This document shows positions 124 through 58,849 of a DNA stretch of 64,000 bases, one piece after another. Below the pieces are notes generated by a model. It saw only the letters and a program-made list of their open reading frames with translations. It was not told the origin of the DNA and made no database searches. The DNA lies in the NCBI RefSeq assembly GCF_046119375.1, contig NW_027362765.1, positions 120,528,001-120,592,000 on the forward strand, in the 5' to 3' direction. Position 1 is the first letter of the stretch. Each line of letters begins with the position of its first letter. Origin of the DNA: Phyllobates terribilis (Eukaryota). The position numbers and the translations under genes are program-made.

Positions 124-3100
124 CTATGTGATGTCCTTCTGTCTGGGTGGGCGATGAATGTTTCTCACAACGCATTTTACCATCCATTCCACTCCTTCAT
201 TCACTCCACTCCTGCAAGAACAAAGAGGTGATCTCAGGATACTTATTAAAGCACAACTTTTTGGGGATCATAATCTCACCCAACATCACATCTTATACAA
301 TATTCACATCCAGCGCTGCATTTACAATCCTACTGGCTGTTGTAACAGAGCAAAGCAAAAAATGCTGCTCTGGATTTGACTGGAGCATAAAAATTATGCA
401 CTCAAAATTGGAAAACTGGTTAAAAGCAGAAATCAAAATATATACAGGTGCATCTCACTAAATTAGAATATCATAAAAAAAATAATTTATTTCAGTTCTT
501 CAATATAAAAAGTGAAACTCATGTATTATATAGAGTCATTACAAACAGAGTGAACTATTTCCAGTGTATATTTCTGTTAATGTTGAGGATTATGGCTTAC
601 AGCCAATGAAAACACAAAAGTCATTATCTCAGTAAATTAGAATACTTTATAACAACAGCTTGAAAAATGTTTTTAAAATCCGAAATGTTGGCCTACTGAA
701 ATGTATGTTCAGTAAATGCCCTCAATACTTGGTCGGGGATCCTTTTGCATCAATTACTGCATCAATGCGGCGTGGCATGGAGGCGATCAGCCTGTGGCAC
801 TGCTGAGGTGTTATGGAAGCCCAGGTTGCTTTGATAGCAGCCTTCAGCTCGTCTGCATTGTTGGGTCTGGTGTCTCATCTTCCTCTTGACAATACCCCAT
901 AGATTCTCTATAATAGATTCTCTATGGGGTTAAGGTCAGGCGAGTTTGCTGACCAATCAAGCACAGCGATACTGTTGTTTGTAAACCAGGTATTGGTACT
1001 TTTGGCAGTGTGGACAGGGGCCAAGTCCTGCTGGAGAATGACATTTCCATCTCCAAAAAGCTTGTCGGCAGAGGGAAGCATGAAGTGCTCTAAAATTTCC
1101 TGGTAGACGGCTGCGCTGACTTTGGTCTTGATAAAACACAGTGGACCTACACCAGCAGATGACATGGCTCCCCAAACCATCACTGATTGTGGAAACTTCA
1201 CACTAGACCTCAAGCAGCTTGGATTGTGGCCTCTCCACTCTTCCTCCAGACTCTGGGACCTTGTGGAGTGTGTCAATGACTGCCTTTTGGACATCTGTCA
1301 AGTCAGCAGTCTTCCCCATGATTGTGGAGCCTACTAAAACAGACTAAGGGACCTTTTTAAACGCTTAGGAAGCCTTTGCATGTGTTTTTGTTAATTATTT
1401 TAATTTACTGAGATAATGAATTTTGTGTTTTCATTGGCTGTAAGCCATAATCATCAACATTAACAGAAATAAACACATGTAATAGATCACTCTGTTTGTA
1501 ATGATTCTATATGAGTTTCACTTTTTGTATTGAAGAACTGAAATGAATTAACTTTTTGATGATATTCTAATTTAGTGAGATGCATGTTTTACAAAAAAAA
1601 CAGCTTTATACTTGACAAATGCTGTAAAATAATAAGACACGCAACCATCACTGTACCACTCTCCAAACCCTTACCCGGAGAGGGCAGAGCAGGCCTGGGT
1701 CAGGCAATCCCTCTTCCCAATCTTATTAATGCAGTCACTGAAGGCCGTCTTAATATCAGGAATGGAGAGACAACCCTAAATAGAAAGGAACAGTTTTATT
1801 TAATATCTGGTACCACCCTAATAGGAACCCCGATTGTCAGGGTATTTATTAAACTTTACACTAATTAACATCTAAGCTGCTCACACTAAAATGGCATCTT
1901 AGGTTAGGTTATAGCACCCACTAGTGGCAAGCATAAATAATTACACTTTAAAGGGCATCTGTCCAAAGGTTTTAGCTATGGAATATGAAAGTAGCATGAT
2001 GTAGGGGCAGAGACCCTGATTCCAGGGATGTATCTATTATTATTATGTATCTCTTACTGGACTGCTTGGTGCAGTTTTGATAGAATTCCTGTTTTCTCTG
2101 CTGTACATGTAGCAGTGCTATGACTGCTGAGCTCTGTATGATCACGCACACACTACTGATTGGCAGTTTCCTGTGTACACTGTGAGGAAGCTGCCAATCA
2201 GCGGTGGGGGCAGGGTTATACAGATTATCTGGACTGTCTTGCATGAGACATCTAGTCCTGTAGGGATAATCTCCTGCTGATAAAACACAGATTGTATTGA
2301 AACTACATCACACAGCCTAGTAAGTGACACGTTCCTGGAATTAGGGTCTTTGCCCCTACATCATGCTGCTCTCAGAATAAATTGCAAAAACCTGCTGGCA
2401 GATTCCCTTTGAATGCTAGTGTCAGGAGGATAACATAACATTTTGACCTTACTCACCATGGAGTTTTGATTTAGTTTTAAATGCCATCGTGGTTACCCAT
2501 AATATTGAGAGATCCAGAGTTACATTTACCAGCCCATGAGACCTATACATCAGTAGAACAGATGTCGCCCTCCCCCAGATTACCTCCACGTCTTGTTTAT
2601 TTGCCAAGACCAGGATGGGCACACCTTCCAGAGCTTCACTGCTGATCATCTTCTCTACAAAGAAAAAAAACAAAAAACACAAAACTGATCATTCTTAAAA
2701 ATCCATCAACACGTTATCACAGCAGATGGAACAGCCTTTATTTCCTATCCTAAAAAGCTCTACAGCACAGATATGGATAACATGATACATTCTGGACTAT
2801 GTAGCATCAGCAGGTCGTGACATTTTCAATGAATTTACCAAAAGTACGTTTGGACTCCGACAGGCGCGTCTCATCGGTGGAATCAATGACATATATGACT
2901 CCATGGGACTCTGCGTAATACTGAAGACAGGAAAAAAATTAGAAAACCACTAAAACAGTGTACATTGGGATAGTCGCTCCACTTGTAATTTAGCACTTTG
3001 CAAGGTCTGTAGTTACTATTCTGGTCTAGAGTTTAGTGTTGTGCGTCTCACCTTATCCCATAGAGACTGAAGCTCCTCCTGTCCACCGAGGTCCCAGAAC

Positions 3101-7806: not shown

Positions 7807-10800
7807 ATATGGTAAAGTTTATTATTTTCAATTGTCGATGTTTTAGTTTTGCTGGCTTTGGCAAGCAAAGGCTGGAGGATGTTGGGGTGCAGAGGAAATT
7901 CACTGTCGCCCTTTTCCTATTGTGCTCAGGTTTTCCCATGGACAGGTTGTGCCAGTCAGCGAGCTCCAAGTCTTTGAAGAACCAGATCTCAGTAATCTTC
8001 GGATTGATACTCCCTGCCTTGCCAAACATGAGGATGGCATCTGGTACCCAGCGCGAATTACAGGTAAAGGCTGATGTTGCCCCTATATGTGTCCTGTGGG
8101 TGGTCACACACTGACTGTTCACCCTGGTTCCTTTTTACAGATATAGATGACAACTTTTACACGGTCAAATTTGACTCCCTGCTGCTGAAAGATGCGGTTC
8201 TGGAGGCTGACGCCATTATTCCACCTCTGCGGGAGAGCGACAGCTCATCCTCCGATGAGGACGACCTGGATGGAGTGGAGGATTTCGGGTATGCTAAAGG
8301 TAAATGTAAACTTATCTCTTGCTGTAAATGGCTTCTCCAGTGTATTGTAAAGCGTAGCCATTGTATAAAAAGTTCTGCAACTTTCTAATATACTTTGGCC
8401 TTGATCCATCATGTTTGAGCCTTTTTTTTTCTGGAATAAAAATGGTTCTAATAGTAGCTTTTGTTTTTGCCTCATTGTAAGTTAACTTTTTTTCTTGATT
8501 GTCTTTTTTTTTTTTTGGGGGGGCCAACAATGTTTTCAACCAGATATTTTAGCCTAACTCATCGATAGCAAATTTTCAATCTCTCTCCAAATTTTGCGCA
8601 TTTGTACTTTAGTAACATAGTACAATACCTGGCTAATTTTATTTTTTTGTGCCATTGAAGATTAACGTGCGACTTTCTTAAAGAATTTGACTTCATGCTG
8701 TAAATTGATGCAAGAAAAAAGAGCATCTTTGATTTTGCGCAAAATTTATCAGCCTGCATGCCCTAATTTGAGGAATTTTCCACTTAGAAACTGCAAGTAC
8801 CACAACAAGACAAAAAGGAAAAATCACGCAAATGGTGAATTGTGGCCTTATTGTTCGCTGTCAGTGAATGGTACCATTCACAATTCTATCTTGTCTCTGC
8901 CCAATACTTCCTGCAGCTGATGGTTTGTTACAATTTTATCCAGACGAGAAAATTTTCTATTATCTAAACAACCTTGATTACAGACTAATGCGTTTTATCA
9001 GAGCTGATACATTGGAGCAAACAATTGCTGGCAATGAGTGCAGCTCACAGAGTACTGTCTAGCCTGGATAGTTGTAGGTTTTCAGCATTTGAATGTGAGC
9101 AAAATTGTTTCTATTCATGGTTCGAATCCGAGATCTTAAAAATAGGGAGGAAAGGAAGCACATTATAATTTTTATCATATGATGATTTAGCGTTGGTTGC
9201 ATAAATCTATGATACTGCTCTCTTGTATTTCTGTGCTTCTACAGATGTTTCATGGACATCTTTCTCTGTTTTGCAGTCCTCATGGACAATGGAGAAGTTG
9301 GGGTTACATCCTGCAGCTCTGAATTTGCTGGATGGGAGGCTCATACCCGTGGGATCGGGTCCAAGCTCATGGCTCGTATGGGATACGAGATAGGAAAAGG
9401 TGAGCGATTATTTGGTGACTCTGATAACATTCCAGATTATCTGCAAGGCTGATTAAGAGATCAAAGTAGTGATCTTATCGCCTGCCTCCGGAGGCTTACC
9501 GCTTACCGCTCACGTGCCTTCGGGGGCGTACCGCTCGCCTGCTTCCAGATTGCCTTGGGCGGTGCGCTTCTGAAATTTGGCACTTGAGAAAAGCAACATG
9601 GAAGAGAACAGGGAAAGTAAGTCGGGTTGGATTCAACTAACTTCAGAACTTGCAAGCGGCACGTGTTCCTTCCAAGGTATCTGGCCACTCTGAGACTGTA
9701 GGTGGCCGATAATCTTGGCAACAAGTTATTAACTTTAAAATGAAAAATCCCTTTTTAATAAAGGTAAATTGTAAAGTTCCTTGTGTTTACAAGCACTTTG
9801 CATTTTTTACCATTTAGGAACTCCAAACAACTACTTTTTAAAGAATATCTGTGTTTTTTAAGGCCCCCACTTGGGGTATACCTAAATTACCATATACAGT
9901 AATATTTTGCTAATACAGCATCCTAAAGACTGTTGGATTAGTCCAAATGATCAGACCCCTAAATACATAGCATAGACAGGTAAAGTTATTTTACTGCCTT
10001 CCTGGTGGCTCTTAATAGATGGTATTAATTCTCTGCTTGCATCCCCCTGTGCTCCAGTCTTACATGCTCATGTCAGTGTGCACACACTAGCTCTGTAGTG
10101 TCAGGACATCACTGCAACAATAGCATGTGTATGAGGACCCTCGCCATTATCTTCAAGGGCCACCTAGTCTTGAGCTATCTGGTAAATTACTATTAATCCA
10201 GCATGATACAATTTTTTTTTTTTTTTTTTTTTTTAACCTGGTTTCATTTTAATTAAAAAAAAAATGTTAACAATACAATTTGAATAAATAAATGAACACC
10301 CTCAACTCACTGTCTAAACACAATTGTAGGAAACTTTGTAGCCAAAGAAACCACATAAGATGGAGAACTGGTCGTCCAATGGATAGACGTCCATACAGGG
10401 TTGGACAAACCTTGTTAATGGATGAAAAAATAATTCCTCGACTGGGGAATTTGTACTCGTGTCACTTACTGGGCTGCTTGCTGAGGTTTTGATAACATCA
10501 GTTTTCTCAGCAGGAGATTATCACTAGAGGACTAGTAAACCTGCTGCTATGTAGTCCTCCATATTCATGAGCTCTGTATAACCCCCGCCCCCACCACTGA
10601 ATGGCAGCTTTCTGCCTATGCACAGTGACAGCTGCCAATGAGTAGTGTGTGTGTAAGAAGGAAGACTTGCCTAGGGACAGGTGCGGAGCTCTGGTGCCGG
10701 AACTGCCAGGGTCCTGTCCAGTGTTGCCAGGGGACCCGATTAAGAGTGCACGGGGGACTTCCTGGACAGTGCTGGGGGACAGAGGAGCGGGACGGAAGAG

Positions 10801-13376
10801 AGGAAGTCAGGTGTCTGGGTTCGCACGAAAGAGACAGTTGGTTGTGGAGAGCAGACCGGCAGTTGGGGAGAAACAGTCTGACCTGCCGACAACGAGAGAG
10901 AGACGTGCTGCCCTGTCCTCGGTGAAATAGAGACGTGCTGACCTGTCTGCGGTGACGGACGAACGGGTGACACAGCTTGCCGCAAAACAAGGGGCGTGCG
11001 GTCTGTACCGGGCCTACAGAAAGTGATCGTTCAGTTACCTGCATCACCACAGTTTTCCAGACATCTGACGGTGACCTACGGGTGAGGACGCACCCGGGAT
11101 TAGTGATCCTAACGCAGTTTGTTGCACGCCGGAGGAGCTTGCTACGGCTCTTAAAGGACTCGTGACCGCTGTCGTGTGGTCAAAAGGACTGGGGGCCCAG
11201 TGGGTGAGACCCGAGACCGCCCACTGCCGCCAGAAGACGGACACCCTCCGGAGTGAGTGTCTGAAGATGGACGTAGTTATCGCTAAAGGACAGATAAGTG
11301 CAAGCCTCCAGTAATCTACCTTCTCTTATTCAGCCTGAACTTTTGGGACTGCGCCGTATTGTTCATCCTTTCCGTGTTAAAGTTAAACCACAATCGTTTA
11401 TTGGCCGATTTTACTGTTTTATTGTTGTGTTACTTAAATTTACACTCCCTGCGTGGAGATACCAAACTTGAATTAAACCTTTGCCATACTCTCTGCGTGC
11501 TGTGTGCGGCATCTGAGCCTTTTAACATGTGCAGGGTTATACAGCGCTCCGCATTCAGAGAACTGGTAGACCTGCAGCAGATAATACAGGGATTTTTCTT
11601 AAAACTGCAGTAATCAGCCCATTAAGAGATACATCCGGGTCTTCTTCCCTACATCATGTTGCTCACAGATAAGATAGCAAAATCCTGGTGACAGATTCCC
11701 TTTAAGTCCTAATCATGAGAGTATACCCTGGAATATGTATAGCTCTGCCCCAGTCACCAAATATTTTATCTGCGTTGTTCAGGTCTTGGAAAGAATTCGG
11801 AGGGGCGAGTGGAGCCCGTTCAGGCCGTGGTCTTACCTAAAGGAAAATCTCTGGATCAATGCTTAGAATTTCAACAGCGGAAGCAGAAAGGAGGGCGTCC
11901 TGTCCCCAAAGCCAAGAAAAAGCGACAGGCCAAGCCGCCAAGAGTTGGGCAGAGCGGCAATGCTCACCGCAATATCTTTGACTTTTTAAATGAGAAACTG
12001 GAACACAATTCGTCTCTTAAGCAGACGGCAGAGACTGGCATGGAGAGGAAAGGCAAGGAATTGTACAATGCCAGTAAGGACAGCAAGCGGGCTCTGAACA
12101 TTGCACTAGCACAGACGACCGAGAAGATCCTGCAGAAGCAGAGGGAGATTGGGAGGATGGCTGAGGCTTTGGCACGTAATGTGGGAAGGTAAGCCAGAAT
12201 TACTTGGGCACATTGGTGTATATAGTATACATGAGGGCACAGCTGCAGGAACAGCCCAGCAGCCTTGCCTTATATGATCCTTAGCTGATAAGATTTGTGC
12301 AAAATTACAAAAATTTTCATCTGTTGGGTTTTCACACCAGTTTTGCCCAGCTGCGCCTAAATGGGAGCAGTTGGGGGAAAACGGGGTCACTACGGCACAA
12401 TTCGACTAAGTTATGACAAGCTGTGGTGTGCCTTACGCCAAAAAGCTTACTCCAGTAACTGACTGGAGTAAGATCTGTGGCAAGGTGCATGCCACTTGTC
12501 ATAGACTCTGGATTCTTGAAGAGGCGTGCGCCCCTTAGTGAATCGGGAGCGTCTGACTCTACACGTGCTCCCAGATCAAGGCCGGCCTCAACATCACCAT
12601 TCTTGATAAGTCGGTGCCAATGAATATTAGAAAGGTATAGGACCTGGTTCATTATTTGCACCTTATTTTTTGTCTAGTATTTGATTTTCACCTAATTCTT
12701 CTTTTAAGTTGTGCCTTTTTTTAACGTCTCCTTTTATTTACTCACTTGTTTGTTGTTTTTTTAATATTCACCATTATTCACTGAGTTTGGGGTTTCCAGA
12801 TATTTTCGGGTGATTCATTAATTGAGACTTTTTGAAAGATTCACGAAATTTGGCTCAAAAATATACTCCAGACCCCCCCCAGAGTGATTTTTTTTATTTT
12901 TTATTTGTACTTCAGTTATTTTGTGAACCGTGCATGTTTTTGCACTGAAAGTTCACAAAACAAGTCAAAGCTAAAAGTTTTGACTTGACGCAAAATTCAT
13001 CCATTTTGAAGAATTTTGCGCATGAAAAAAAAAAGAAAAATGACTTTAAAAGAACGCAAATGATAAATTGTAGCCATAGAATTTTTCATATGTCCTATTT
13101 GAGTCCATAAAATTGCTGCCTCCATCTAAAAAAAAAAAACAGCCGCAGCCGTCTGGTGAGACGCCAAGGCTCTGTGCACATGTATAAACCAGGCCTGGCT
13201 TTTATTTCACCTTTTCTTGCTTTTGATCCTCGCGCAGAGACAGCGTTGTGAGCGTACAGCTGGAATCTCGTCTCTCGAGCGCTCGCTCTGAGCTCACAGA
13301 CCTACAGCAGCAGGAGAGGAGTCTGCAGAGAGAGCAGAAGAAGGCGGACACACACAAGAAGATGACGCAGTTCTGA
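7099..13376 (+). CDS. ZGPAT: Zinc finger CCCH-type with G-patch domain protein, complete spliced CDS (498 aa)
   Basis: Exons 7099-7634 (MDEESL...CCCH finger CPYFLDGKCRFNENC), 7930-8063 (RFSHG...Tudor-like WYPARIT), 8141-8299, 9277-9399 (G-patch HTRGIGSKLMARMGY), 11783-12188, 13238-13376 (KADTHKKMTQF*). Total 1497 nt, phases consistent. Head-to-head with ARFRP1 as in other vertebrates. Confidence 0.96.
10212..10458 (-). mobile_element. Short poly(A)-tailed retroposed fragment (5'-truncated LINE end or processed mRNA end)
   Basis: T run of about 23 nt on plus; ATTAAA shortly upstream of the A tail on minus; interrupts a MITE. Confidence 0.55.
10652..11527. mobile_element. Solo LTR (876 bp) in ZGPAT intron 5
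   Basis: TG...CA termini (tgtaag / tttaaca) flanked by a 4-bp TSD tgtg (10648-10651 and 11528-11531); inserted in a TTAA-type MITE that ends at gattccctttaa near 11705. Confidence 0.8.
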
Positions 13377-15623: not shown

Positions 15624-18600
15624 ATGGCTCCACGTCTTGTCACCTCTGAGTCTGAAGGCCACATCCTTACTCCTGTCTTCTCTGCCATGGGGCTATTCCT
15701 GCTGCTCTGCGGCCTCTGCATGTTCTGCAAAAAGAGGTACGTGCAGATGAGACTTTAAAGGAAATCACAATGTGACAGCGGGATGTCACTGACCAATGAT
15801 GCCTGTCTCTGTGTAGCCCTAACCCTAATGTTAGCACCATGCTTTGCCCTATTAAAGGGAATCAGTCAGCAGGTTTTTGCTAGTAATCTGAGAACTGGAA
15901 TGGGCAGAGACCCTGATTCCAGCAATGTGTTACTTATTGGGCTGCTTGTTGCAGTTTCAATAAAATAAGTGTATGATCAGCAGGAGATTATCACTAGAGG
16001 ACTACGTACTCACAACATAAGGGCCGCGTGGTGCCTGTATGGGCAGCGGAGTAACTTGATGATTGTAAGTCCCAATGATTAATCTGTATATGGCTCTGCT
16101 AACCATGTGCCCTTTATAATACTAGCGACTTCTTATGCCTTTGGACCATCCTTGGTGCCGTGTATGACTACCTGTACACTCCATAAATATGAGGAGGCCT
16201 CTGGTTTCATAAGAAATTATATGACCTGTAAAGAGTTGTCACAACCTAAAAGAAATCAATAAAAATCTATTTTTATTAGAAAAAAGCACAAAACACAATA
16301 AAAATACCATGCTAGCTAGCAAATGGCAGAATGAGTATAGGAAAAATTCCACACAATAATAATGAATGAGGTTCACAGATCAAAAAGGAGACAGAGGAGT
16401 ACGTGGGTAGAAAAGGTGAAAAAAGTTGTTCTGTATATCCTTCCGTTATAAAGCATGGGCATATATACTGAGGATAGTCAGCGGCGACATATATACAATT
16501 ATATACAGTGCATTAAGAGTTCAATACCATATAATAATAATAATAATCTTTCTTTTTATATAGCGCTAACATATTCCTCAGCGCTTTACATACATTATCG
16601 TCGCTGTCCCCATTGGGGCTCACAATCTAGATTCCCTATCAGTATGTCTTTGGAGTGTGGGAGGAAACCGGAGAACCCGGAGGAAACCCAGGCAAACACA
16701 GGGAGAACATACAAACTCCTTGCAGATGTTGTCCTTGGTGGGATTTGAACCCAGCGCTGCAAAGCAACAGTGCTAACCACTGAGCCACCGTGCCTACCAA
16801 AAAAGGTATAAAAAGGTAAAAGAAATAAGTGGCATTGACAAAATCAATATTGATGTAGAAACATGTACATGTGCATCTCACTAAATTAGAATATCATCAA
16901 AAAGTTAATTTATTTCAGTTCTTCAATACAAAACGTGAAACTCGTATATTATATGGCGTCATTACAAACAGAGTGATCTATTTCATGTGTTTATTTCTGT
17001 TAATGTTGATGATTATGGCTTACAGCCAATGAAAACACAGAAGTCATTATCTCAGTAAATTAGAATACTTTATAACAACAGCTTGAAAAATGTTTTTAAA
17101 ATCTGAAATGTTGGCCTACTGAAATGTATGTTCAGTAAATGCCCTCAATACTTGGTCGGGGATCCTTTTGCATCAATTACTGCATCAATGCGGCGTGGCA
17201 TGGAGGCGATCAGCCTGTGGCACTGCTGAGGTGTTATGGAAGCCGAGGTTGCTTTGATAGCAGCCTTCAGCTCGTCTGCATTGCTGGGTCTGGTGTCTCT
17301 CATCTTCCTCTTGACAATACCCCATAGATTCTCTATAATAGATTCTCTATGGGGTTAAGGCCAGGCGAGTTTGCTGACCAATCAAGCACTGTGATACTGT
17401 TGTTTTTAAACCAGGTATTGGTACTTTTGGCAGTGTGGACAGGTGCCAAGTCCTGCTGGAGAATGAAATTTCCATCTCCAAAAAGCTTGTCGGCAGAGGG
17501 AAGCATGAAGTGCTCTAAAATTTCCTGGTAGACGGCTGCGCTGACTTTGGTCTTGATAAAACACAGTGGACCTACACCAGCAGATGACATGGCTCCCCAA
17601 ACCATCACTGATTGTGGAAACTTCACACTAGACCTCAAGCAGCTTGGATTGTGGCCTCTCCAGTCTTCCTCCAGACTCTGGGACCTTGATTTCCAAATGA
17701 AATGCAAAATGTACTTTGCATTTACTTAGTGTCAGTGACTGCCTTCTGGACATCTGTCAAGTCAGCAGTCTTCCCCATGATTGTGGAGCCTACTGAAACA
17801 GACTAAGGGACCTTTTTAAACACGTAGGAAGCCTTTGGAGGTGTTTTTTGTTAATTATTTTAATTTACTGATATAATGACTTTTGTGTTTTCATTGGTTG
17901 TAAGCCATAATCATCAACATTAACAAATAAATACTTGAAATAGATCACTCTGTTTGTAATGACTCTATGATATGGGTGTGACTTTTTGTATTGAAGAACT
18001 GAAATTAATTAACTTTTTGATGATATTCTAATTTGGTGAGATGCATGTTTTACTAAAAAATAGCTTTATACTTGACAAATGCTGTAAAATAATAAGACAC
18101 GCAACCATCACTGTACCACTCTCCAAACCCTTACCCGGAGAGGGCAGAGCAGGCCTGGGTCAGGCAATCCCTCTTCCCAATCTTATTAATGCAGTCACTG
18201 AAGGCCGTCTTAATATCAGGAATGGAGAGACAACCCTAAATAGAAAGGAGCAGTTTTATTTAATATCTGGTACCACCCTAATAGGAACCCCGATTGTCAG
18301 GGTATTTATTAAACTTGACACTAATTAACATCTAAGCTGCTCACACTAAAATGTATCCAGACAAATCCCTCACTATAATGTAGGCTCAAAACACAATAGA
18401 AAAGCAAATGTTATGTATATATGCCTGCACTGTTGTATCTGATTTATAACAGTATAAGCACAGGCAATCCACATGCTATATGACATATAGAAAAAAGTTG
18501 AAACACTTTACCCATGTCCCAGGGTGTACTGCATAATACAATAATAATTATTATTGTGTGGAATTTTTCCTATACTCATTATACCATTAGCTAGCTAGCT

Positions 18601-21600
18601 TGGCATTTTTATTGTGTTTTATGCGTTTTTCTAATAAAAATAGATTACTCTGTCGCCTCACTGGGGGACACAGGACCATGGGGTGTTATGCTGCTGTCCA
18701 CTAGGAGGCGACACTATGCATAATCTGAAAAAGATTAACCGTGGCTCCTCCTCTGCAGTATACACCCCTGGACGGCATCAGCCTTCTCCAGTTTTTGCTT
18801 AGTGTCGCATAGGAGGCACACCTAAAATTTTTACTCCGTTTTCACCGACTTGATTACAGATGAAGAAAAGTGGGTCTACTACGAGACTCCCGGCTTGGCT
18901 CCTTCCTCGGCCCCTTATTATGGGGTGCACGGTTGAAGTCGAGATGGCTATTCCCCATGTCGCTCCTTCCCCAGCCCCTCGGGTGCTGGTTCGACGTCGA
19001 GACCCCCCTCCTTCCCCAATTCCTTTTGGTTTCTGGGTTGAGGTCGAGGCGAGGATATAGCCCCCTGATGGTGACAACAGCACCTCCCTAATCCCCCCCT
19101 GGGGGTATTAGGTTGAAACGCCTCAGGTAGGGCCTGTACAGGCAGCAGCTCCCAGCAGCCAGCACACTACGGCTGAATCCAGGGACCCCAGCCTTGCGGG
19201 CTCCTGTCGGGGCCGGGGGGAGTGCAGGCAGAACACAGCAGAGGCACAGGCCTCCCTGCGCCCTGTTCCTGCGGCAGCACCAGCTCTACGGTGCTTCAGG
19301 GGTGCTCTTCACAGGGCCCCCCCCCCCCCTTCCGTTTATACCCCACCGCTATCCTACCTTTAAATCCGGGGGGGGGGCCCGGTTCAGATCCGGCCCCCTC
19401 CCGGACTTCCACGCCAGCCTGCAGTCCCTTTGGGCATCAGGCATCTAATTTAGGCCGCGGCTTCGGCCTAGCCGAAGCCGCCACCTCCTCTCCCCGGCCC
19501 GGCCCCCGGATGACAAATATGACACTCTACAGTGTCATAGAGGGGGCGGATCGAGACTGAAAGGGCGCGATTTCACACAGTTCTGCCGCCCTTTTCAGCT
19601 CTCCGCCCCCCTTCTTTCTTAACTTTACTCTGGCTGCCATTATCTGCTGCAGGATAAGGGAACACAAGCCAGTCTCCGGGGGGCTCAGGACTGTGGATCT
19701 TCGGTTCTGGACCTAGGGGCACACTGGTGGGATAAGATCACAGCTGGAGTTCTTCCTCGGCTGTGAGTCCATATTCCTTATAGGCTCCTCTGCATAGCCA
19801 CCCCTGTAGGGCCCTCTGCATAGCCACCCCAGTGCACTATGCCGGGCTCAAGGTCCAAGAGAACCAGACAGGACTGCTGTTATGCACTCTGTACAGCCTG
19901 CAGCAATACTCTCCCAAGTGGCAGCACGTACCCGCACTGCCAGGACTGCACCCAGACTACTGTGCCAGAGCCCCAAGAAGCCCCTGCCAATGCTTCGGTG
20001 TCTAATGCCACGCTGGAATGGGTCACTCAGATGTCGCAATCTATGACGCAGTCTATAGATAACCTAACCTCCACATTGCCTCAGGTTCTGCAGAGTCATG
20101 CCTCGGCTATGAACGCTACCCAGCAAAGGGAAGGCTCGACTCGGGGACATGATGACCCGGGCACATCCACGTCTAGGTCAGGACGCAAGCGGACCCACAG
20201 GTCACGTTCATCTGCGTCATCCCATAGCACACGGTCATCCCCTTCTAGGGAGAGACACCGTAGTTCCAGGTCATCTAGACCGTCCCCTGCCAGGGACAGA
20301 CAATGCAGTTCTCCGCAGCGATCCCCGACCAGAGAAGGCCTCCACCCTGGTTCACCCAGCAGGATACGCCTTAGCGATACACAGGATTCGGAAGGCATCT
20401 GTGATTCCGACTCAGACAAGGAAACTGAAGGGTCTCTGATCCCAATCCCCCCTAGCAATACAGCGCTAGTTGAGGACGTAATCTCGTCCATCCATCAGGT
20501 GCTGGACATTTCTGATCCGCCCCCGGAGGCACCACAACACAAGATTTCCTTTGAAGGAGTTCTGAAACCGCCTAAGGTCTTCCTTGACCACCCAGAGTTT
20601 AAGTCGATCCTTAAAAAGCAGTTCTCACAGCCTGAGAAGAAGTTTACCAATCGCAAATATCTGGAGGCGCGGTACCCCTTCCCACAGGAGACCACCAAGG
20701 AATGGACAGATCCACCAGAAGTGGATCCCCCAGTCTCTAGGCTAGCAGCACAGTCACTCCTTTCACTGCCAGATAGCTCAACCCTCAGGGACACAGCAGA
20801 CCGGCAGGTAGAACGCATGGCTCGTTCAATTTTCGAGGCCGCAGGGGCCTCCCTGGCTCCCGCGTTCGCTTCAGTTTGGGCTGCCAAGGCCATCCTGGCT
20901 TGGGCCCAAAATTTACCATCTGGCCTCCCAGTATCTGCTCCTAAGCTGTCTGACCAAGCGGTTGAATTAGCAGATGTAGCAGATTACATGCTTCATGCAG
21001 CTCTGGATTCTGCAAGGGGTGCAGCGGGGATAGCATCAAACGCCATCACGATTCGGTTTATCCTCTTGCTGTGGGAATGGAAAGCAGACGCAGCCTCAAA
21101 GAAGTCCCTCACGCACCTTCCTTACCTCAGTGGTCGACTTTTTGGTGAACAGTTGGACACTATAATATCCAACGCCACCGGGGGTAAGAATACCTCTCTC
21201 CCCCAACTGAAACCCAAACGCACTTACAAGAAGCGTAACCAAACTCTATTCCGATCCTTTCGGAACTCTTCGGGCTGGTCCGTCTCGCGGCCAGCACAAA
21301 ATAGCAACCGCCCCATACGCAGGGACAACTCGCGGTCGACGCAAAAGTCGGACCAGACCTGGCAATCAAAAGCAGGCCAGTCAAAGTTTAAAGGAGGAAA
21401 ATCTCAGACTTCCTCTTCATCATGACTCACGGACTCCGGAAGACACCCCACCTGTAGGCGGCCGACTTTTGCTCTTCAATCAAGTCTGGCTGCCTATTAC
21501 AGAAGACAGGTGGGTCAGGGAACTAGTGTCTTCGGGATACAAGATAGAGTTCACTTCCAACCCACCAAACAGACTCTTTCTTTCTGTTCCCCCAAAACTG

Positions 21601-24600
21601 CCAGCCAAGGCTTGTGCCTTCCGCCAAGCGGTCTGCTCGCTTATTCAAGCTGGAGACATAGTACCGGTCCCCGCGGCCGAGCGCTTCCGAGGGTTCTACT
21701 CCAATTTATTCGTAGTCCCCAAGAAAGGAGGCGGCGTATGGCCCATACTGGACCTAAAACAGCTCAACAAATATGTACGGGTACGTCACTTCCGCATGGA
21801 GTCCCTTTGGTCCATCATTGCGTCCATGGAAAAGGGAGAATTTCTCGCCTCCATAGACATACAAGACGCATACCTGCATATACCAATTGCACACACCCAT
21901 CAGAGATTTCTCAGGTTCGCAATCGACCAGGACCACTACCAGTTCGTGGCTCTCCCGTTCGGACTCGCCACTGCTCCCAGAGTGTTTACCAAAGTCATGG
22001 CAGCCACCATGGACGTCCTGCACTCCAGAGGCATAGTAGTCGTTCCATACCTGGACGATCTCCTTATCAAGGCTCCCACCTTCAAGGACTGCGAGCTCAG
22101 CGTCTCAATCACAATCGACATTCTGAGTCACCTGGGCTGGTTAGTCAACCTACAAAAGTCATCACCAACCCCGAGTCAGTCTCTGACCTTCCTGGGAATG
22201 CTATTCAACACCTTCAGGGGTCTAGTGCTCCTTCCCAAGGACAAGGCACTGCCTCTCCGTCTAGGAGTTCGCACTCTCCTCAGCAAACCCCTTCGATCTC
22301 TCTGGTTTGCCATGAGAGTCCTCGGCAGGATGGTGGCGGCAATAGAAGCGGTCCCATTTGCCCAGCTTCACCACAGGCCTCTCCAACTAGCCATCCTCAA
22401 GTCATGGGACAGGAACCCTTTTTCTCTCAACAGGAAGTTCCAGCTGACGTAGTCACCCAGGAGGTCCCTGCACTGGTGGCTCAAGCCAACCTCACTAACA
22501 AAGGGGAAACCCTTTCTCACGGGTCAATGAAAGGTTCTGACCACCGACGTGAGCCTGACGGGTTGGGGTGCGGTACACCTACACCACAGAGCACAGGGAA
22601 AGTGGTCCCCAGCGGAAGCGACCATGCCCATCAACATCTTGGAAATTTGTGCCATCCTCCTGGCATTTAGAGCCTTCCATCACTTACTGGCAGCCTCTCA
22701 CATCAGAGTACAGTCGGACAATGCCACAGCTGTGGCATATGTGAATCACCAAGGGGGGACCCGCAGCGCCCAGGCGATGCGAGAAGTGACACACATTCTC
22801 CACTGGGCGGAAGACACAGGTTCGGTTCTCTCTGCGGTCCACATTCCGGGTGTGGACAACTGGGAAGCAGACTTCCTCAGCCGGAAAGGAATGGACTCGG
22901 GAGAGTGGTCTCTCCATCCCGAAGTTTTTCGACAGATCTGCAATCGCTGGGGGACTCCGGACGTAGACCTAATGGCATCTCACTTCAATGCCAAGGTCTC
23001 CAACTTCATAGCCAGAACTCATGACCCGCGGGCGCTAGGAGCGGACGCCCTGGTTCAGGACTGGACCCAGTTCCAGCTCTTGTACATTTTTCCACCTCTC
23101 CCCCTGATATCCAGAGTGGTGAGGAAGATCAAGCAAGAGGGAGTTCCAACCATCCTAATCGCACCGGACTGGCCCAGACGTACATGGTATGCCGACATCG
23201 TACAGCTCACAGCAGACGTCCCCTGGCGTCTCCCCAACCGCCCGGATCTTCTGTCACAACCACCAGAACTCAGGGGCCCTCAATTTGACGGCTTGGCCAT
23301 TGAGACCTGGGTTCTAACCCAGTCAGGGTTCTCACCGGACGTCATTGGAACCATGATCAGGGCACGGAAGCCAACCTCTGCTAAGATTTATTACCGTACC
23401 TGGAAAGCCTTCTTTACCTGGTGCGAATCTCGTGGCCAGACCCCATTCCCTTGTTCCCTCCCCAGGGTCTGGAGGCCAGACTGTCCCTGGCCTCCCTTAA
23501 CAGCCAGGTGTCGGCTCTCTCAGTGCTTTTTCAGAGGTGCATTGCTAACAAGCCGCAAGTAAGGACATTTCTTCAGGGGGTTTCCCGATTGGTTCCCCCC
23601 TACAGACGACCACTAGAAACGTGGGACCTCAACCTGGTGCTGACAGCATTGCGGGAAACACCCTTTGAACCCCTTAGGGAAGTCCCACTCCGCCTTCTAT
23701 CCCAGAAAGTGGTTTTCCCGGTGGCAATCACCTCGCTACGCAGGGTGTCTGAACTGACAGCACTCTCCTGCAGACGGCCCTTCCTGGCTTTTTACCAGGA
23801 CAAGGTAGTTCTCCGTACGGTCCCATCCTTCCTTCCGAAGGTTGTGTCCAACTTCCAACTCAATGAGGAAATTTCACTGCCATCCCGCTGTCCGGTCCCG
23901 GTTCATACAGTGGTGAAGGCTCTGCATACGCTTGACCTTGTCAGGGCATTGCGTATCTATGTGTCTAGGACTGCGCCCTTCCGGAAGTCTGATTCTCTTT
24001 TTCTTCTTCTGGAAGGCGGCCGCAAGGGTCTGCCTGCTTCCAAAGCTACCCTTGCCAGGTGGATCAAATCCACCATACAAGAGGCCTACCGCCTCAAAAA
24101 TTCTCCTCTTCCAGCAGGCATTACGGCACACTCTATACGTGCGGTAGGGGCCTCCTGGGCCATTCGGCACCAGGCTTCGGCACAACAAGTGTGTAAGGCA
24201 GCCACCTGGACTAGCCTACACACGTTTACCAAACACTACAGGGTTCATACCCAGTCCTCAGCAGATGCGAGCCTGGGTAGACGTGTTCTGCAGGCGGCGG
24301 TACCCCAATTGTAGGGGCCCGTCTACACAATATTCGTCCATTGCTTCCCACCCAGGGACTGCTTTGGGACGTCCCATGGTCCTATGTCCCCAATGAGGCG
24401 ACAGAGTAAAGGAGATTTTTGTGTACTCACCGTAAAATCTCTTTCTCTTAGCCTCTAATTGGGGGACACAGCTCCCACCCTGTCGCCCGTTCCGGGCTGT
24501 TATGTTGAGTTCTCATATTGGTTTGTTTTTTTTTGAGCTCGTACATAGTTGCCTTCTTATAGGCATGGTTATGTTATCCATGTTACTTTCCTCCTAATGC

Positions 24601-53620: not shown

Positions 53621-55923
53621 CTCAGCTCTAGGAGTCCCTATATACTGGGAAATGGAAGGATCGGGTGACGGTGCGTCTTATGTGTCGTGCCATTTGCATT
53701 TTTCAATAGGAAACCATTGTGGGGATTTTTACAGCTGCGCCACTACCGCACAATAAACCGCACATGCATTGTTTTTATTTTCCTAGAAGCGATAGTTGGT
53801 GCATATGTCCCCAGCCTGAGCGATGTCCCGGGGCGGCAGCAGACTTGATTTCAGGCATCTATGGAGGGAAAGATTTGTATCTTTCTTCTTACGGTTTCAG
53901 TAAGGTTACTATTTGAGGAAGATTTTTTTGCACTTGTAAAATTGGGCTAGGGCACAAGCACAGTAATGTATGCAGATCATGGTTAGATGTATTGATCTGG
54001 AAGGTGCAATACCCCCCCACTCAGCCATGTGGGGGGCAGTGTTACTCAACAATCCAAGGGAAGGCCGGGGTGGGCAGCCACACAATGCTTTAATCAATTT
54101 GCACTTGATCATGTGATTAGTTGAAATCTTTTCTTTTTCAGAGGAGAAGGGAACATTCTGAGTCTCCGCCATTACTTTTGCACAGTCTGGGGAAGAAGTT
54201 GTGTGTGTGGTGGTGGGGGGGGGGATTTTGGCATGTTTCTATATTGTGTACCCTGTGCTTTGTGTTTTAAAATTTAACCCCATTGCAGGAAGCTAGATTT
54301 TGGGGACACAGAAGAAAGGAGCAAGGTTGTTTTTGAAGATTGGTTGCAGCACCATAGAAATCTGGTATAATCATTGGGGTCTTTAATTTCCTCCTGGGTA
54401 ACATATTTGACAACTCTCTCATCCTTATCATCTGATTGCATTTTATCCCCAGACACTAATATACAATATGGTAGTTTCCATGCGGGAAATCCTGCAATTT
54501 CATTTAGTAGCAGTACCTGTTAACAATCAGTAGATGGCGATGTTGTCAATGCCATACATTGAGAATGTTGTGTACTAGGGAAGAGAAGCCCGTCATTTAC
54601 AACCTAGCAGGCCATTGACTTTATAGGATTGCCACCCAATCCGCAGGCACTGCCGTGGTTGCACAATCACTTTTTTTTTTTATAGCACATATAAGCTATA
54701 CGTAATGGTGTCAAATATGGCATGAATGTGGATATTTCTGCAACTGCACGTGATCCACCTATAATCTAATGTCGATATCTATCTGAATATTCTGCATCCG
54801 TTATGTCTAGAACTAATGGCAGCAATCATGGATTGCATGACTGGGGGTTCTGTCATTTCACCCTTCCTCCTTTCGTCATCACAATGCCAAAACCAGACTG
54901 ATGGGGGCAGTGTTGGATGCAAGATTCATAGGCGATGTACGGTGCCATCATGCCATGTGTGATGTGGGCCATTGTGCTAGAGCTGCCTGGCACTGTAACG
55001 GATATTTCACAGACGGGGTGGGGGGATATAGCACCATGCAGCGTCCGAGGCACATTCCAAAGTTACATGAAGCAAAAAGTAATGATATAAGCTTTATTTT
55101 ATAAAAAAATTCTTGCACTAAGTTTGGCCTGGAAAATAAACATGCCATAGATAGAGGTGGTGAAAGGGGGCCGGGCTGGTATATGCACTAGGGATGGTAT
55201 ATTGTAGCCTGCAGGAGGGGCACCACGCTACTTGTGCACAGGATGTAGTGTCTGTGCCCGCAGCAGAGATGTACGTCCTGGGGGAGGGAGTCCTTACTTG
55301 TGAAATGTAGGGAAAAGGTGTAGGCTGTGTAATTGTTTCTTCCATATGTGCGGCTGTGACTGTTTGACAGTATACACACAGCGCCACCTCATGGAGACTA
55401 ATGTGCCAAGCACAGAGCTAAACCTTTTGTCAGTTATCCTGGTAAAAAAAAAAAATAAAGATTTTTCTTTTTGTAATTTCTGGTTTATATTATTTCCTTC
55501 CAGATACATACAGTGGGGGCTAAAAGTCCTTAAAACCTCTTGTAAGGCGGAGTTCACACGTGCATTATTTGAGGTTTTCTGTTCCATCATAGGAGCAAAA
55601 AAAAAAACCTAAAAATGATCAGAGTACTGACACAAAACAGTGGTGCTGAATGGACCCCCTTGATTTGTGTTCATGGATGGGTCGACCACTATTTTTTTAA
55701 TTAAATGCATGTAATTGGGGCTAAAATCATTTTTGCAGTTGGTTTTCATTAAAATATGTTGCACTATTTGCTTTCTATGTTGCCATGTCTATTGCTCGCT
55801 GTAGAATGAGTTAGCCAAGAATCAGTCTGTGAGTTCTCTATGACAGTCTGACTGGGGAGCTTGTAACGTATCTGGCTGACTTACAAGTGCTTCTCACTAA
55901 ATTAGAATATCATCAAAAAGTTA

Positions 55924-57254
55924 CCGTATATACTTGAGCATAAGCCGACTCCTGGTATGCATGGCCCCCTCATCCCAATCCTGGTATGCATGGCCACCTC
56001 ATCCCCAGTCCTGGTATGCATGGCCCCCTCATCCCCAGTCCTGGTATGCATGGCCCCCTCATCCCCAGTCCTGGTACGCATGGCCCCCTCATCCCCAGTC
56101 CTGGTACGCATGGCCCCCTCATCCCCAGTCCTGGTACGCATGGCCCCCTCATCCCCAATCCTGGTACGCATGGCCCCCTCATCCCCAATCCTGGTACGCA
56201 TGGCCCCCTCATCCCCAATCCTGGTACGCATGGCCCCCTCATCCCCAATCCTGGTACGTATGGACCCCTCATCTCCAGTCCTGGTACGTATGGTCCCCTC
56301 ATCCGCAATGCTGGTATGCATAGCACCCCTCATCCCCAGTCCTGGTATGCATGGCCTCCTCATCCCCCAATTCTGGTATGCGTGGCCTCCTCATCCCCCA
56401 ATTCTGGTATGCGTGGCCTCCTCATCCCCCAATTCTGGTATGCGTGGCCTCCTCATCCCCCAATTCTGGTATGCGTGGCCTCCTCATCCCCCAATTCTGG
56501 TATGCGTGGCCTCCTCATCCCCCAATTCTGGTATGCGTGGCCTCCTCATCCCCCAATTCTGGTATGCGTGGCCTCCTCATCCCCCAATTCTGGTATGCGT
56601 GGCCTCCTCATCCCCCAATTCTGGTATGCGTGGCCTCCTCATCCCCCAATTCTGGTATGCGTGGCCTCCTCATCCCCCAATTCTGGTATGCGTGGCCTCC
56701 TCATCCCCCAATTCTGGTATGCGTGGCCTCCTCATCCCCCAATTCTGGTATGCGTGGCCTCCTCACTGCACACACAAAAAATAAACACTTATACCCACCT
56801 TCCTTCCTCCCTCACCTCTGCTCCAGCACTGCGTCCTGTTCTGCTGCAGCAACTCATGTCAGCATCTGAGCAGCGCATGGCGTCACTGCCATGCGCTCTC
56901 AGATGCTGATGTGATCTGCCAACATATTCACTCCTCTCCACGCCGGGACTATGTGCATGGGGAGGAGTGAATATGCATTCTCTTTAGTAGCGAGTAAAGA
57001 GAATGAATATTCATTCTTCTCCATGCCCATGGGAGTGTAGAAGAGGGAATATTCATTTCCCTATAGCAGCGAGCACACGTGGTAGCTGCAGCAGCCGGCT
57101 TACTGCGTGTGCCCCGCTCCTCCGTCGCCACAACCCCCCCCTCCCCCCATTATCCACCACCGGAATTTTTATATACTCGAGTATATACCTGAGGGGGGCT
57201 TTTTCAGCACAAAAAATGTGCTGAAAAGCTTGGCTTATACTTGAGTATATACGG
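55924..57254. mobile_element. Non-autonomous Tc2/pogo-like element nested in the Tc1 TIR
   Basis: TIRs ccgtatatacttgagcataagcc / ggcttatacttgagtatatacgg; TA TSD. Removing it restores aaaaagttaatttatttcag seen in copy B. Confidence 0.88.
55950..56765. repeat. Bipartite 30/31-bp minisatellite
   Basis: About 13 copies of cctggtaYgcatggccccctcatccccaRt, then about 13 near-identical copies of aattctggtatgcgtggcctcctcatccccc. Confidence 0.96.
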
Positions 57255-58849
57255 TAATTTATTTCAGTTCTTAAGTACAATAAAGTGAAACTCATATATT
57301 ACAAACAGAGTGATCTATTTCAAGTGTTTATTTCTGTTAATGTTGATGATTATGGCTTACAGCCAATGAAAACACAAAAGTCATTATATCAGTAAATTAA
57401 AATAATTAACAAAAAACATCTGCAAAGGCTTCCTACTTGTTTAAAAAGGTCCCTTAGTCTGTTTCAGTTGGCTCCACAATCATGGGGAAGACTGCTGACT
57501 TGACAGATGTCCAGAAGGCAGTCATTGACACACTCCACAAGGAGGGTAAGCTACAAAAGGTCATTGCTAAAGAAGCTGGCTGTTCACACAGTGCTGTATC
57601 CAAGCATATTAATGGAAAGTTGAGTGGAAGGAAAAAGTGTGTTAGAAAAAGGAGCACAAGCAACCGGGATAACCGCAGCCTGTAAAGGATTGTTAAGAAA
57701 AGGCCATTCAAAAATTTGGGGGAGATTCACAAGGAGTGGACTGCTGCTGGAGTCATTGCTTCAAGAGCCACCACACACAGACGTATCCAGGACATGGGCT
57801 ACAAGTGTCACATTCCTTGTGTAAAAGCCACTCATGACCAATAGACGCTAGAAGTGTCTTACCTGGGACAAGGAGAAAAAGACCTGGACTGTTGCTTAGT
57901 GGTCCAAGATGTTTTCAGATGAAAGTACATTCTTCATTTCATTTGGAAATCAAGGTCCCAGAGTCTGGAGGAAGAGTGGAGAGGCCACAATCCAAGCTGC
58001 TTGAGGTGTAGTGTGAAGTTTCCACAATCAGTGATGGTTTGGGGAGCCATGTCATCTGCTGGTGTAGGTCCACTGTGTTTTATCAAGACCAAAGTCAGCG
58101 CAGCCGTCTACCAGGAAATTTTAGAGCACTTCATGCTTCCCTCTGCCAACAAGCTTTTTGGAGATGGAAATGTCATTCTCCAGCAGGACTTGGCCCCTGT
58201 CCACACTGCCAAAAGTACCAATACCTGGTTTACAAACAACAGTATCACTGTGCTCGATTGGCAGAAAACTCGCCTGACCTTAACCCCATAGAGAATCTAT
58301 GGGGTATTGTCAAGAGGAAGATGAGAGACACCAGACCCAACAATGCAGACGAGCTGAAGGCTGCTATCAAAGCAACCTGGGCTTCCATAACACCTCAGCA
58401 GTGCCACAGGCTGATTTCCTCCATGCCACGCCGCATTGATGCAGTAATTGATGCAAAAGGAGCCCCGACCAAGTATTGAGGGCATTTACTGAACATACAT
58501 TTCAGTAGGCCAACATTTCAGATTTAAAAACATTTTTCAAGCTGTTGTTATAAAGTATTCTAATTTACTGAGATAATGACTTTTGTGTTTTCATTGACTG
58601 TAAGCCATAATCATCAACATTAACAGAAATAAACACTTGAAATAGATCACTCTGTAATGACTCTATATAATAGGAGTTTCACTTTTTGTATTGAAGAACT
58701 GAAATAAATTAACTTTTTGATGATATTCTAATTTAGTGATAAGCTCTTGTATGACCACAGACAACATCAAAGTTGAATGTACAGAAAAGCAAAACGGTGC
58801 TAAATTTTTAATGCAACTCAATTGCAAAGATGATTTTTAGCCCCAACTA

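What the first reader, a model, noticed from the sequence alone, without database searches (positions are those of the whole stretch)
16868..18353. An ARFRP1 coding exon was copied 16.46 kb away together with its neighbouring Tc1 element
Seen: 16868-18353 is a copy of 445-1893, i.e. the Tc1 plus about 308 bp of one flank only, including the 101-bp exon with acceptor and donor intact. On the other side similarity stops at the TIR. Copies A and B share two changes absent from copy C: a 14-bp insertion (aatagattctctat) and ggggatcc vs ggggctcc. They carry different internal deletions and scattered substitutions, which argues against an assembly artefact. Inference: one-sided flank capture during Tc1 mobilisation or ectopic repair, leaving an exon antisense in LIME1 intron 1. 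Cut-and-paste Tc1 elements are not generally expected to carry flanking host exons.
Basis: partly seen in the sequence, partly recalled or inferred. Interest (0 to 1): 0.72.

Follow-up and report, generated by a model that had tools for sequence, protein, structure and literature searches.

The report
ARFRP1 exon copied beside a Tc1
In this frog genome a 308-base piece of the ARFRP1 gene, including one whole coding exon, was copied 16.5 kb away onto the end of a Tc1 transposon, most likely as a by-product of DNA break repair between two neighbouring Tc1 copies; it is real and tidy, but it is one apparently functionless case of a process already described.

Summary
Window 445-1893 (A) and 16868-18353 (B) align end to end, and similarity stops at the Tc1 left end and 308 bp past its right end. 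The exon at A (1675-1775, minus strand) is the true penultimate ARFRP1 coding exon; the copy at 18135-18235 is identical and lies antisense in an intron of a LIME1-like gene.

The reading "copied together with its Tc1" is only half right. The two Tc1 bodies are no more alike than either is to the unrelated third copy C (about 97% left part, 93-95% right part), while the flank is 98.7% identical. Their internal deletions are not nested. A's deletion joint recurs in many contigs of the same species, so it marks a subfamily. Only the odd right tip and the flank are a true copy.

Three related species carry the flank once, with no Tc1 beside it.

Best reading (about 0.57): B already held its own Tc1; a break at its right end was repaired by copying from A's Tc1 tip out into the ARFRP1 intron and exon, then joined at B's own TA. 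Main rival (about 0.27): end-bypass, or single-ended, transposition using a weak surrogate end. This is a new natural example of a known kind. This scan has not noted such a flank copy elsewhere in this genome.

The parts
445..1586 (-). Tc1-like element A, an internally deleted IR/DR-type copy in the last ARFRP1 intron. The left end is TA|CAGGTG. The right tip is non-canonical (GATGCA-TG-TTT-TA instead of GATGCACCTG/CATG-TA).
   Evidence: ORF 911-1297 (minus) matches Pfam DDE_3 and Sleeping Beauty transposase 5CR4 at 2e-15.
1587..1893 (-). Parental ARFRP1 flank: intron, exon, intron. Three related species hold it once, with no Tc1 on its left.
   Evidence: table 8, records 16, 24 and 32..
1675..1775 (-). 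Genuine penultimate ARFRP1 coding exon (GCLSIPDIK...CSALS-G). It lies in correct order between the NKQD exon (~2580-2655) and the last exon (127-215).
   Evidence: Neighbouring exons match Pfam Arf.
16866..16867 (.). TA immediately left of element B.
16868..18047 (-). Tc1-like element B, with its own internal deletion. It keeps 29 nt that A lacks, then has the filler at 17718-17729. About 21 substitutions are private to it. Direct repeats sit at 16875-16893 and 17049-17067.
   Evidence: (table 3).
17718..17729 (+). Filler at B's deletion joint. Nine nt (GCATTTACT) are an inverted copy of 17134-17142 of the same element, which marks a repair scar.
   Evidence: 4 matches in the window, all in Tc1 copies; 0.5 expected.
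18048..18353 (-). Copied ARFRP1 flank. It differs from A by 4 substitutions and 1 indel, three of them in the A-run at 18053-18061.
18135..18235 (-). Exon copy with 0/101 differences and intact AG and GT. It is antisense to the LIME1-like gene.
18351..18355 (.). Right junction ATG|TA. ATG equals the last 3 nt expected of B's own Tc1 end, and TA equals the expected target-site duplicate.
55884..58752 (+). Copy C of the same Tc1 family. It is longer, has an unrelated element with tandem repeats nested at about 55923-57250, and shares no flank. I used it as the comparison copy.
15625..15737 (+). First coding exon of the LIME1-like gene (short N-terminus, membrane span, C..C..CKKR, then GT). Later exons lie at about 31198 and 32873, so B lies in the intron between.
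   Evidence: Pfam LIME1 gives E = 0.0018, below its cutoff.

Best explanation
B already carried its own copy of this very abundant Tc1 family, inserted at a TA. A break at the right end of that copy, most simply a transposase cut during excision, was repaired by homology-directed synthesis. The Tc1-side 3' end paired with the right inverted repeat of the Tc1 16.5 kb away in ARFRP1. It was extended through that element's odd tip and ran on for about 306 nt into the ARFRP1 intron, exon and intron. It was then joined to the other side of the break at ATG|TA. The 3 nt that a Sleeping-Beauty-type staggered cut leaves on the flank could have supplied the microhomology. Shown here: the Tc1 bodies are independent copies, only tip plus flank is a true copy, ARFRP1 is the parent, and the event is specific to this lineage. 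Inferred: the kind of break, the priming point within the last ~10 nt of the repeat, and the joining step. Replication-fork template switching primed from the same homology would leave the same product and is not separated here.
For: 1. Tc1 identity is star-like. A-B is 96.8% (left) and 93.4% (right), against A-C 97.1/94.4 and B-C 96.7/95.2; the flank is 98.7%.
2. Right-part Tc1 differences (19/309) exceed flank differences (4/308), Fisher p = 0.002. Against the non-exon flank p = 0.028.
3. The deletions are not nested.
4. A's joint (17688>17731 with TGGAGTGC between) has depth 274 against a single-copy depth of about 6. It also dominates the short loose ends at 17729, but only in the same species.
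5. A-private changes are biased to the inverted repeats (17/523 against 2/606). Post-insertion decay would not do that; a different source element would.
6. At 17824 both the A and the B letters are common family variants.
7. B's deletion joint carries a templated inverted filler, so that element has a repair history.
8. The junction ATG|TA fits B's own end plus its target-site duplicate.
9. The 16.46-kb cis distance fits the cis bias of gap filling reported for animal TIR elements, frogs included (PMC8277862).
10. Germline Tc1 breaks are repaired by homologous recombination (PMC13148408).
Against: No outgroup or second haplotype showing a Tc1 at B without the flank could be obtained. The last 30 nt of the copied flank resemble a Tc1 end more than chance predicts: 16/30 matches, a window fraction of 0.0014; beyond the first CAT, 13/27 and about 0.01. 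Repair does not predict that. IR/DR elements are reported to enforce synapsis before cleavage (PMC5224488), so a lone right-end cut is disfavoured and full excision with template switching has to be assumed. When the exon is left out, the whole-Tc1 versus flank contrast is not significant (p = 0.22). Only one outside copy (C) was available for the star-like test.
Confidence: 0.57

Rival explanations
1. End-bypass, or single-ended, transposition. The Tc1 at ARFRP1 had a damaged right tip. Transposase paired the good left end with a surrogate end 306 nt downstream and moved Tc1 plus flank as one unit into a TA at B. The donor gap was then refilled from the sister chromatid, with part of the Tc1 body recopied from another family member. 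That recopying would explain why A and B bodies now differ.
For: The parental flank is directly linked to a Tc1 at the same junction, which is the hallmark of end bypass (PMC8277862). The right tip is non-canonical in both copies. The surrogate end reads CAT... with TTAGA in register, 16/30 matches to the left end, window fraction 0.0014. TA lies on both sides of B. Precise left-IR integrations at TA from single-ended substrates occur with Sleeping Beauty at about 0.5% (PMC5224488). Local hopping fits the 16.5-kb distance (established knowledge of Tc1/Sleeping Beauty).
Against: The simple form predicts that A and B are sister copies, and they are not. It also predicts the same or nested deletions, and they are not nested; A's is a multicopy subfamily marker. 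Rescue needs near-complete replacement of the donor body while keeping its odd tip. The surrogate end is followed by GC, not TA, at the donor. It matches the direct-repeat core only 9/18. The flank is present just twice, so the composite never moved again.
Confidence: 0.27
2. Ordinary segmental duplication or non-homologous insertion whose left breakpoint fell on a Tc1 end by chance, followed by divergence.
For: Small dispersed duplications are common. TA after the right end has roughly a 1 in 12 chance.
Against: The left boundary coincides with the Tc1 terminus to within 2 nt. The Tc1 part is more diverged than the flank, and the deletions are not nested, so the two parts do not share one age. 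No homology lies beyond either end.
Confidence: 0.1
3. Assembly artefact: only one locus exists.
For: The segment holds a very high-copy repeat. The bridging contig is a collapsed A/B path and may come from the assembled sample.
Against: There are about 49 substitutions, different deletions, and B-private letters that are near absent from the family pile-up. A short-read contig crosses 18353/18354 with 185 unique nt on the right. Flank depth is about twice the unique depth.
Confidence: 0.03

Closest known systems
Gap-filling capture by TIR transposons in animals (Pack-TIRs; Tan et al. 2021, PMC8277862)
   Same: Small size (their median is 224 bp). The parent is close in cis (57% of theirs lie within 15 kb). 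Microhomology at a breakpoint. Frogs are rich in such events. Exonic and intronic sources. The mechanism is template switching during repair of a break in or at a resident element.
   Different: Here the captured piece lies outside the element, after its right inverted repeat, not between two repeats. The parental copy is itself attached to a family member. Their pipeline excluded that class on purpose.
End-bypass transduction of flanking DNA (P element; also 3' transduction by L1, SVA and Helitrons)
   Same: Element plus one-sided flank at the new site, with the parent linked to an element at the same junction.
   Different: The element bodies at parent and daughter are not sister copies, and the composite is single-copy.
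Exchange of sequence between dispersed Tc1 copies through break repair in C. elegans (Fischer, Wienholds and Plasterk 2003; seen here only as a citation, content from my own knowledge)
   Same: A Tc1-end break repaired from a non-allelic Tc1 copy.
   Different: That work describes transfer of polymorphisms inside elements.
Single-ended integration of Sleeping Beauty, piggyBac and Hsmar1 substrates (PMC5224488)
   Same: A precise left-IR junction at TA with a non-canonical other end.
   Different: Those are plasmid assays with one repeat removed. Here the right repeat is present and only its tip is odd.

Membership tests
Tc1/mariner, IR/DR (Sleeping Beauty-like) group | DDE transposase of the Tc1 type | tested here: met
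   Pfam DDE_3 at 1.5e-08, above its cutoff. 5CR4 Sleeping Beauty transposase at 2.2e-15. The word search found 3571 relatives with E <= 1e-10; named ones among the listed best hits are Tc1-like transposases.
Tc1/mariner, IR/DR (Sleeping Beauty-like) group | TA target duplication and long inverted repeats, each with two direct repeats | tested here: met
   TA lies at the left ends of A and B and at both ends of C. The repeats are about 210 nt, with a 19-nt repeat at 16875 and 17049.
Pack-TIR (Tan et al. 2021) | Host sequence lies between the two terminal repeats of one element | tested here: not met
   The flank lies outside the right repeat.
Pack-TIR (Tan et al. 2021) | Parental copy is not linked to a TIR element | tested here: not met
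   The parent abuts Tc1 A.
End-bypass transduction | Parental flank is directly joined to an element of the family | tested here: met
End-bypass transduction | Daughter element body is a copy of the parental element body | tested here: not met
   A-B is no closer than A-C or B-C, and the deletions are not nested.
End-bypass transduction | Surrogate end resembles a true end, and a new target duplication flanks the composite | tested here: inconclusive
   16/30 matches (window fraction 0.0014; 0.01 beyond CAT). TA lies on both sides, but it is only 2 nt.
Repair (gap-filling / synthesis-dependent) capture | Resident element at the recipient site before the capture | not testable with these tools
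   Contigs of the relatives barely cover B's unique flanks at 90% likeness, and no further read laying was allowed.
Repair (gap-filling / synthesis-dependent) capture | Cis proximity and microhomology at a breakpoint | tested here: met
   The distance is 16.46 kb. ATG is shared at the right join, and the left switch lies inside the homologous repeat.
ARFRP1 orthologue | Arf-family GTPase exons in order, with the ARFRP1-type C-terminal tail and ZGPAT/LIME1 neighbours | tested here: inconclusive
   Four exons match Pfam Arf. G-box motifs were found. ZGPAT-like and LIME1-like genes lie next door. The name ARFRP1 rests on my recall of the vertebrate protein and of human 20q13.33 synteny.

The most novel reading that the evidence does not exclude
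The copy may not be inert. Because it lies antisense in a LIME1-like intron, every LIME1 pre-mRNA would carry 101 nt perfectly complementary to ARFRP1 mRNA, next to a hairpin-prone Tc1. That could feed small-RNA or antisense regulation of an essential Golgi GTPase in lymphoid cells. Separately, run-off repair at Tc1 ends may be a frequent, overlooked route of exon scattering in poison-frog genomes, which hold on the order of 100,000 copies of this family.
Probability: 0.05. Interest if true: 0.7.

Novelty: new member of a known kind. Interest (0 to 1): 0.36.

Why it matters
This is a clean natural footprint in which the donor, the recipient, both junctions and the polarity of copying can all be read. 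It belongs to a class that the main animal survey of transposon-mediated duplications left out by design: captures whose parent is linked to an element. If such run-off copies are common in transposon-swamped frog genomes, they would be a steady source of stray exons inside other genes. On its own, though, this is a single two-copy event with no sign of use or selection. Zero changes in 101 nt is unremarkable at the observed rate.

Tried and rejected
- I looked for homology continuing beyond either end, or hidden behind later insertions. There is none. The only nearby repeats are an unrelated MITE-like element at 1947-2413 and an unrelated inverted pair at 16264-16363 / 18547-18646.
- I tried to recover an empty or Tc1-only B site in relatives through the read pile-up. 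Their contigs do not cover B's unique flanks at 90% likeness.
- I tried to fetch more family copies or the relatives' loci. Two metagenome pattern scans found nothing. The exact look-up of the antisense ORF is not on record. Its word search had no candidates. The Tc1 ORF word search returned only relatives at 80% identity or less, those named being mostly fish. So the frequencies of the 14-bp duplication and of B's deletion type remain indirect.
- A PDB search with the exon found nothing.
- A single change point in A/B differences falls at about 569, inside the left repeat, not at the Tc1/flank border. It reflects fast-diverging inverted repeats across the whole family.
- RNA evidence for use of the exon copy was not obtained, because the one read-laying run went to DNA runs.

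Full report
**Observation**

436-1263 matches 16859-17688 at 96.4%, and 1270-1893 matches 17729-18353 at 95.2%.

On the left, similarity starts at a Tc1 terminus: TA|CAGGTGCATCTCAC at 443-458 and TA|CATGTGCATCTCAC at 16866-16881. On the right it stops at 1893/18353. Nothing beyond either end is shared.

A third copy of the family (C) lies at 55884-58752 on the other strand. It has an unrelated element nested in one inverted repeat.

**What the pieces are**

The repeat is a Tc1-like element of the IR/DR type.
- Its ORF remnants match Pfam DDE_3 and the Sleeping Beauty transposase structure 5CR4 at 2e-15.
- It has inverted repeats of about 210 nt, each holding a 19-nt direct repeat twice.

All coding exons of an Arf-family GTPase lie on the minus strand between 127 and 4048. 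The start exon carries GLDNAGKT. Then come the WDLGGQ exon, the NKQD exon, the exon at 1675-1775, and a last exon ending ...VEWMVKCVVRNIHRPPRQKDIT.

I call the gene ARFRP1 from my recall of the vertebrate protein and from its neighbours, not from a database hit.
- A ZGPAT-like gene lies at about 7.1-12.2 kb on the plus strand.
- A LIME1-like gene has its first coding exon at 15625-15737 and later exons at about 31.2 and 32.9 kb. Pfam LIME1 gives only E = 0.0018.

So A is the working exon. B lies about 14 kb upstream of the ARFRP1 start codon, in an intron of the LIME1-like gene and antisense to it.

**Evidence from other genomes (all runs are de Bruijn contigs)**

In a run of the same species, a 521-nt contig covers 18019-18538 and so crosses the B right junction. 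Its depth is 10.7, against 5.4-7.4 for B's unique flanks. That is what two copies of the flank would give. The contig carries A-type letters at the A/B differences, so it is a collapsed path. It proves the junction, not the B-specific letters.

In three related species the flank sits in contigs of 2072, 1963 and 935 nt. These match only 18099-18348 or 18055-18324 and continue for 500-1700 nt on the left with sequence unlike the Tc1.
- The relatives therefore have one copy, with no Tc1 beside the exon.
- Both the Tc1 at ARFRP1 and the copy at B arose in this lineage.
- Divergence between species over this stretch (about 3.6-7.8%) exceeds A/B flank divergence (1.3%).

Earlier notes of this scan call the genome the golden poison frog. 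I did not verify that.

**Was the Tc1 copied with the exon?**

Five results bear on it.

1. Over the Tc1, A and B are no closer to each other than to C. The flank is 98.7% identical.

| Part | A-B | A-C | B-C |
|---|---|---|---|
| Left part of Tc1 | 96.8% | 97.1% | 96.7% |
| Right part of Tc1 | 93.4% | 94.4% | 95.2% |

2. Right-part Tc1 differences (19/309) exceed flank differences (4/308), p = 0.002. Against the non-exon flank p = 0.028. The contrast for the whole Tc1 against the non-exon flank is not significant (p = 0.22).

3. The internal deletions are not nested.
   - A is a clean CCTTG|TGGAGTG joint.
   - B keeps 29 nt that A lacks, then has a 12-nt filler.

4. A's joint is a subfamily marker.
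   - A contig with exactly that joint has depth 274 in the same species.
   - A-type letters dominate the short loose ends at 17729 there, but not in the three relatives.
   - A was therefore inserted already deleted, and B cannot descend from it.

5. A's private changes sit almost entirely in the inverted repeats (17/523 against 2/606). That looks like a different source element, not decay in place. B's private changes are spread evenly, and the family pile-up confirms the seven shown there as private.

- The A at 17162 holds about 15% of family depth in this species.
- The bin with the 14-bp duplication shows no depth drop in this species, but falls by 40-60% in the relatives. This second point is indirect.

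What A and B truly share is the odd right tip (GATGCA-TG-TTT-TA where the left ends predict GATGCACCTG/CATG-TA) and the host sequence that follows it.

**Mechanism**

The simplest account is as follows.
- B held its own Tc1.
- A break at that element's right end was repaired by pairing with the right repeat of the ARFRP1 Tc1.
- Synthesis ran through that element's tip into the intron, exon and intron.
- The new strand was joined to the far side of the break at ATG|TA.

ATG is what B's own end should read, judged from its left end CATGTG. It is also the 3-nt overhang that a Sleeping-Beauty-type cut leaves on the flank; that rests on established knowledge of the family.

B's own deletion joint carries a 9-nt inverted copy of 17134-17142. 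So that element has been through error-prone repair before, or in the same event.

Three of the five flank differences cluster in the A-run right after the switch point. This may be repair-synthesis error, or simply run instability.

Published work supports the general picture.
- Gap filling at TIR elements in animals shows cis bias and microhomology, and frogs are rich in such events (PMC8277862).
- Tc1 breaks in the C. elegans germline are repaired by recombination (PMC13148408).

**The rival**

End-bypass or single-ended transposition remains possible.
- The parent is linked to an element, and the tip is damaged.
- The 30 nt at the end of the copied flank match a Tc1 end at 16/30 positions, with CAT and TTAGA in register. 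Only 0.14% of window positions do as well. Beyond the CAT the figure is about 1%, and I tried several lengths.
- Single-ended integrations with a precise left end at TA are known for Sleeping Beauty at about 0.5% (PMC5224488).
- The same paper reports that IR/DR elements enforce synapsis before cutting. That counts against a lone right-end cut and pushes the repair model towards full excision with template switching.

To survive the star-like identities and the deletion conflict, end bypass needs the donor's Tc1 body to have been recopied from another family member while its tip was kept. That is possible during donor-gap repair, but it is an extra assumption.

I put repair at about 0.57 and end bypass at about 0.27. 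Chance segmental duplication gets about 0.10 and artefact about 0.03.

**Known or new**

Transposon-linked small duplications by repair or end bypass are established: P element experiments, Pack-TIRs in 100 animal genomes, and 3' transduction by other elements. This case is not a Pack-TIR by definition, because the cargo lies outside the repeats and the parent is linked to an element. Tan et al. state that their pipeline would miss such cases. It is therefore a new natural member of a known kind, and unusually legible.

Nothing suggests function. The exon copy is identical to A, but zero changes in 101 nt is expected about half the time at B's rate. No RNA evidence was gathered.

**Limits**

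- Only one outside copy of the family was available for comparison.
- The pile-up tables were truncated.
- All runs were contigs.
- The B left junction was not seen in reads.
- The B site in relatives was not recovered.
- Attempts to fetch more copies failed.

Noticed in passing
window 16264-16363 and 18547-18646: A 100-nt inverted repeat pair, 93% complementary, brackets a SINE-like element (about 16530-16800) and the whole B segment. It may be the ends of an older non-autonomous DNA element into which both inserted. A related species has a 90% match to one arm.
   Followed up: partly
window 1947-2413: A MITE-like element with roughly 80-nt inverted ends lies about 55 nt beyond the end of the A flank. 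Related pieces occur at 10458-10651, 11539-11705 and 15851-16004.
   Followed up: no
window 19839-24314: Long plus-strand ORFs: a 528-aa serine-rich protein, a reverse transcriptase (Pfam RVT_1 at 6e-17) and a tyrosine-recombinase-like ORF (Phage_integrase, weak). This is the layout of a DIRS-type retroelement, and it lies inside the same LIME1-like intron.
   Followed up: partly
window 25976-28106: About 2 kb of a short tandem repeat that is open in all six frames (GGATCTQ / HAHKEGG-type translations).
   Followed up: no
window 55923-57250: An element with inverted ends (CCGTATATACTTGAG...) and two internal tandem arrays of roughly 30-nt units is nested in the inverted repeat of Tc1 copy C.
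   Followed up: no
window 16584-18065: Summed contig depth over the Tc1 and the SINE is about 100,000 times single-copy depth in this species and in three relatives. One Tc1 position (17093 T) is near-fixed in this species, while the relatives read A almost throughout. This suggests a lineage-specific burst.
   Followed up: partly
window 3335-3483: A 149-N gap lies inside an ARFRP1 intron. I left it untouched.
   Followed up: no
I did not examine it.
   Followed up: no
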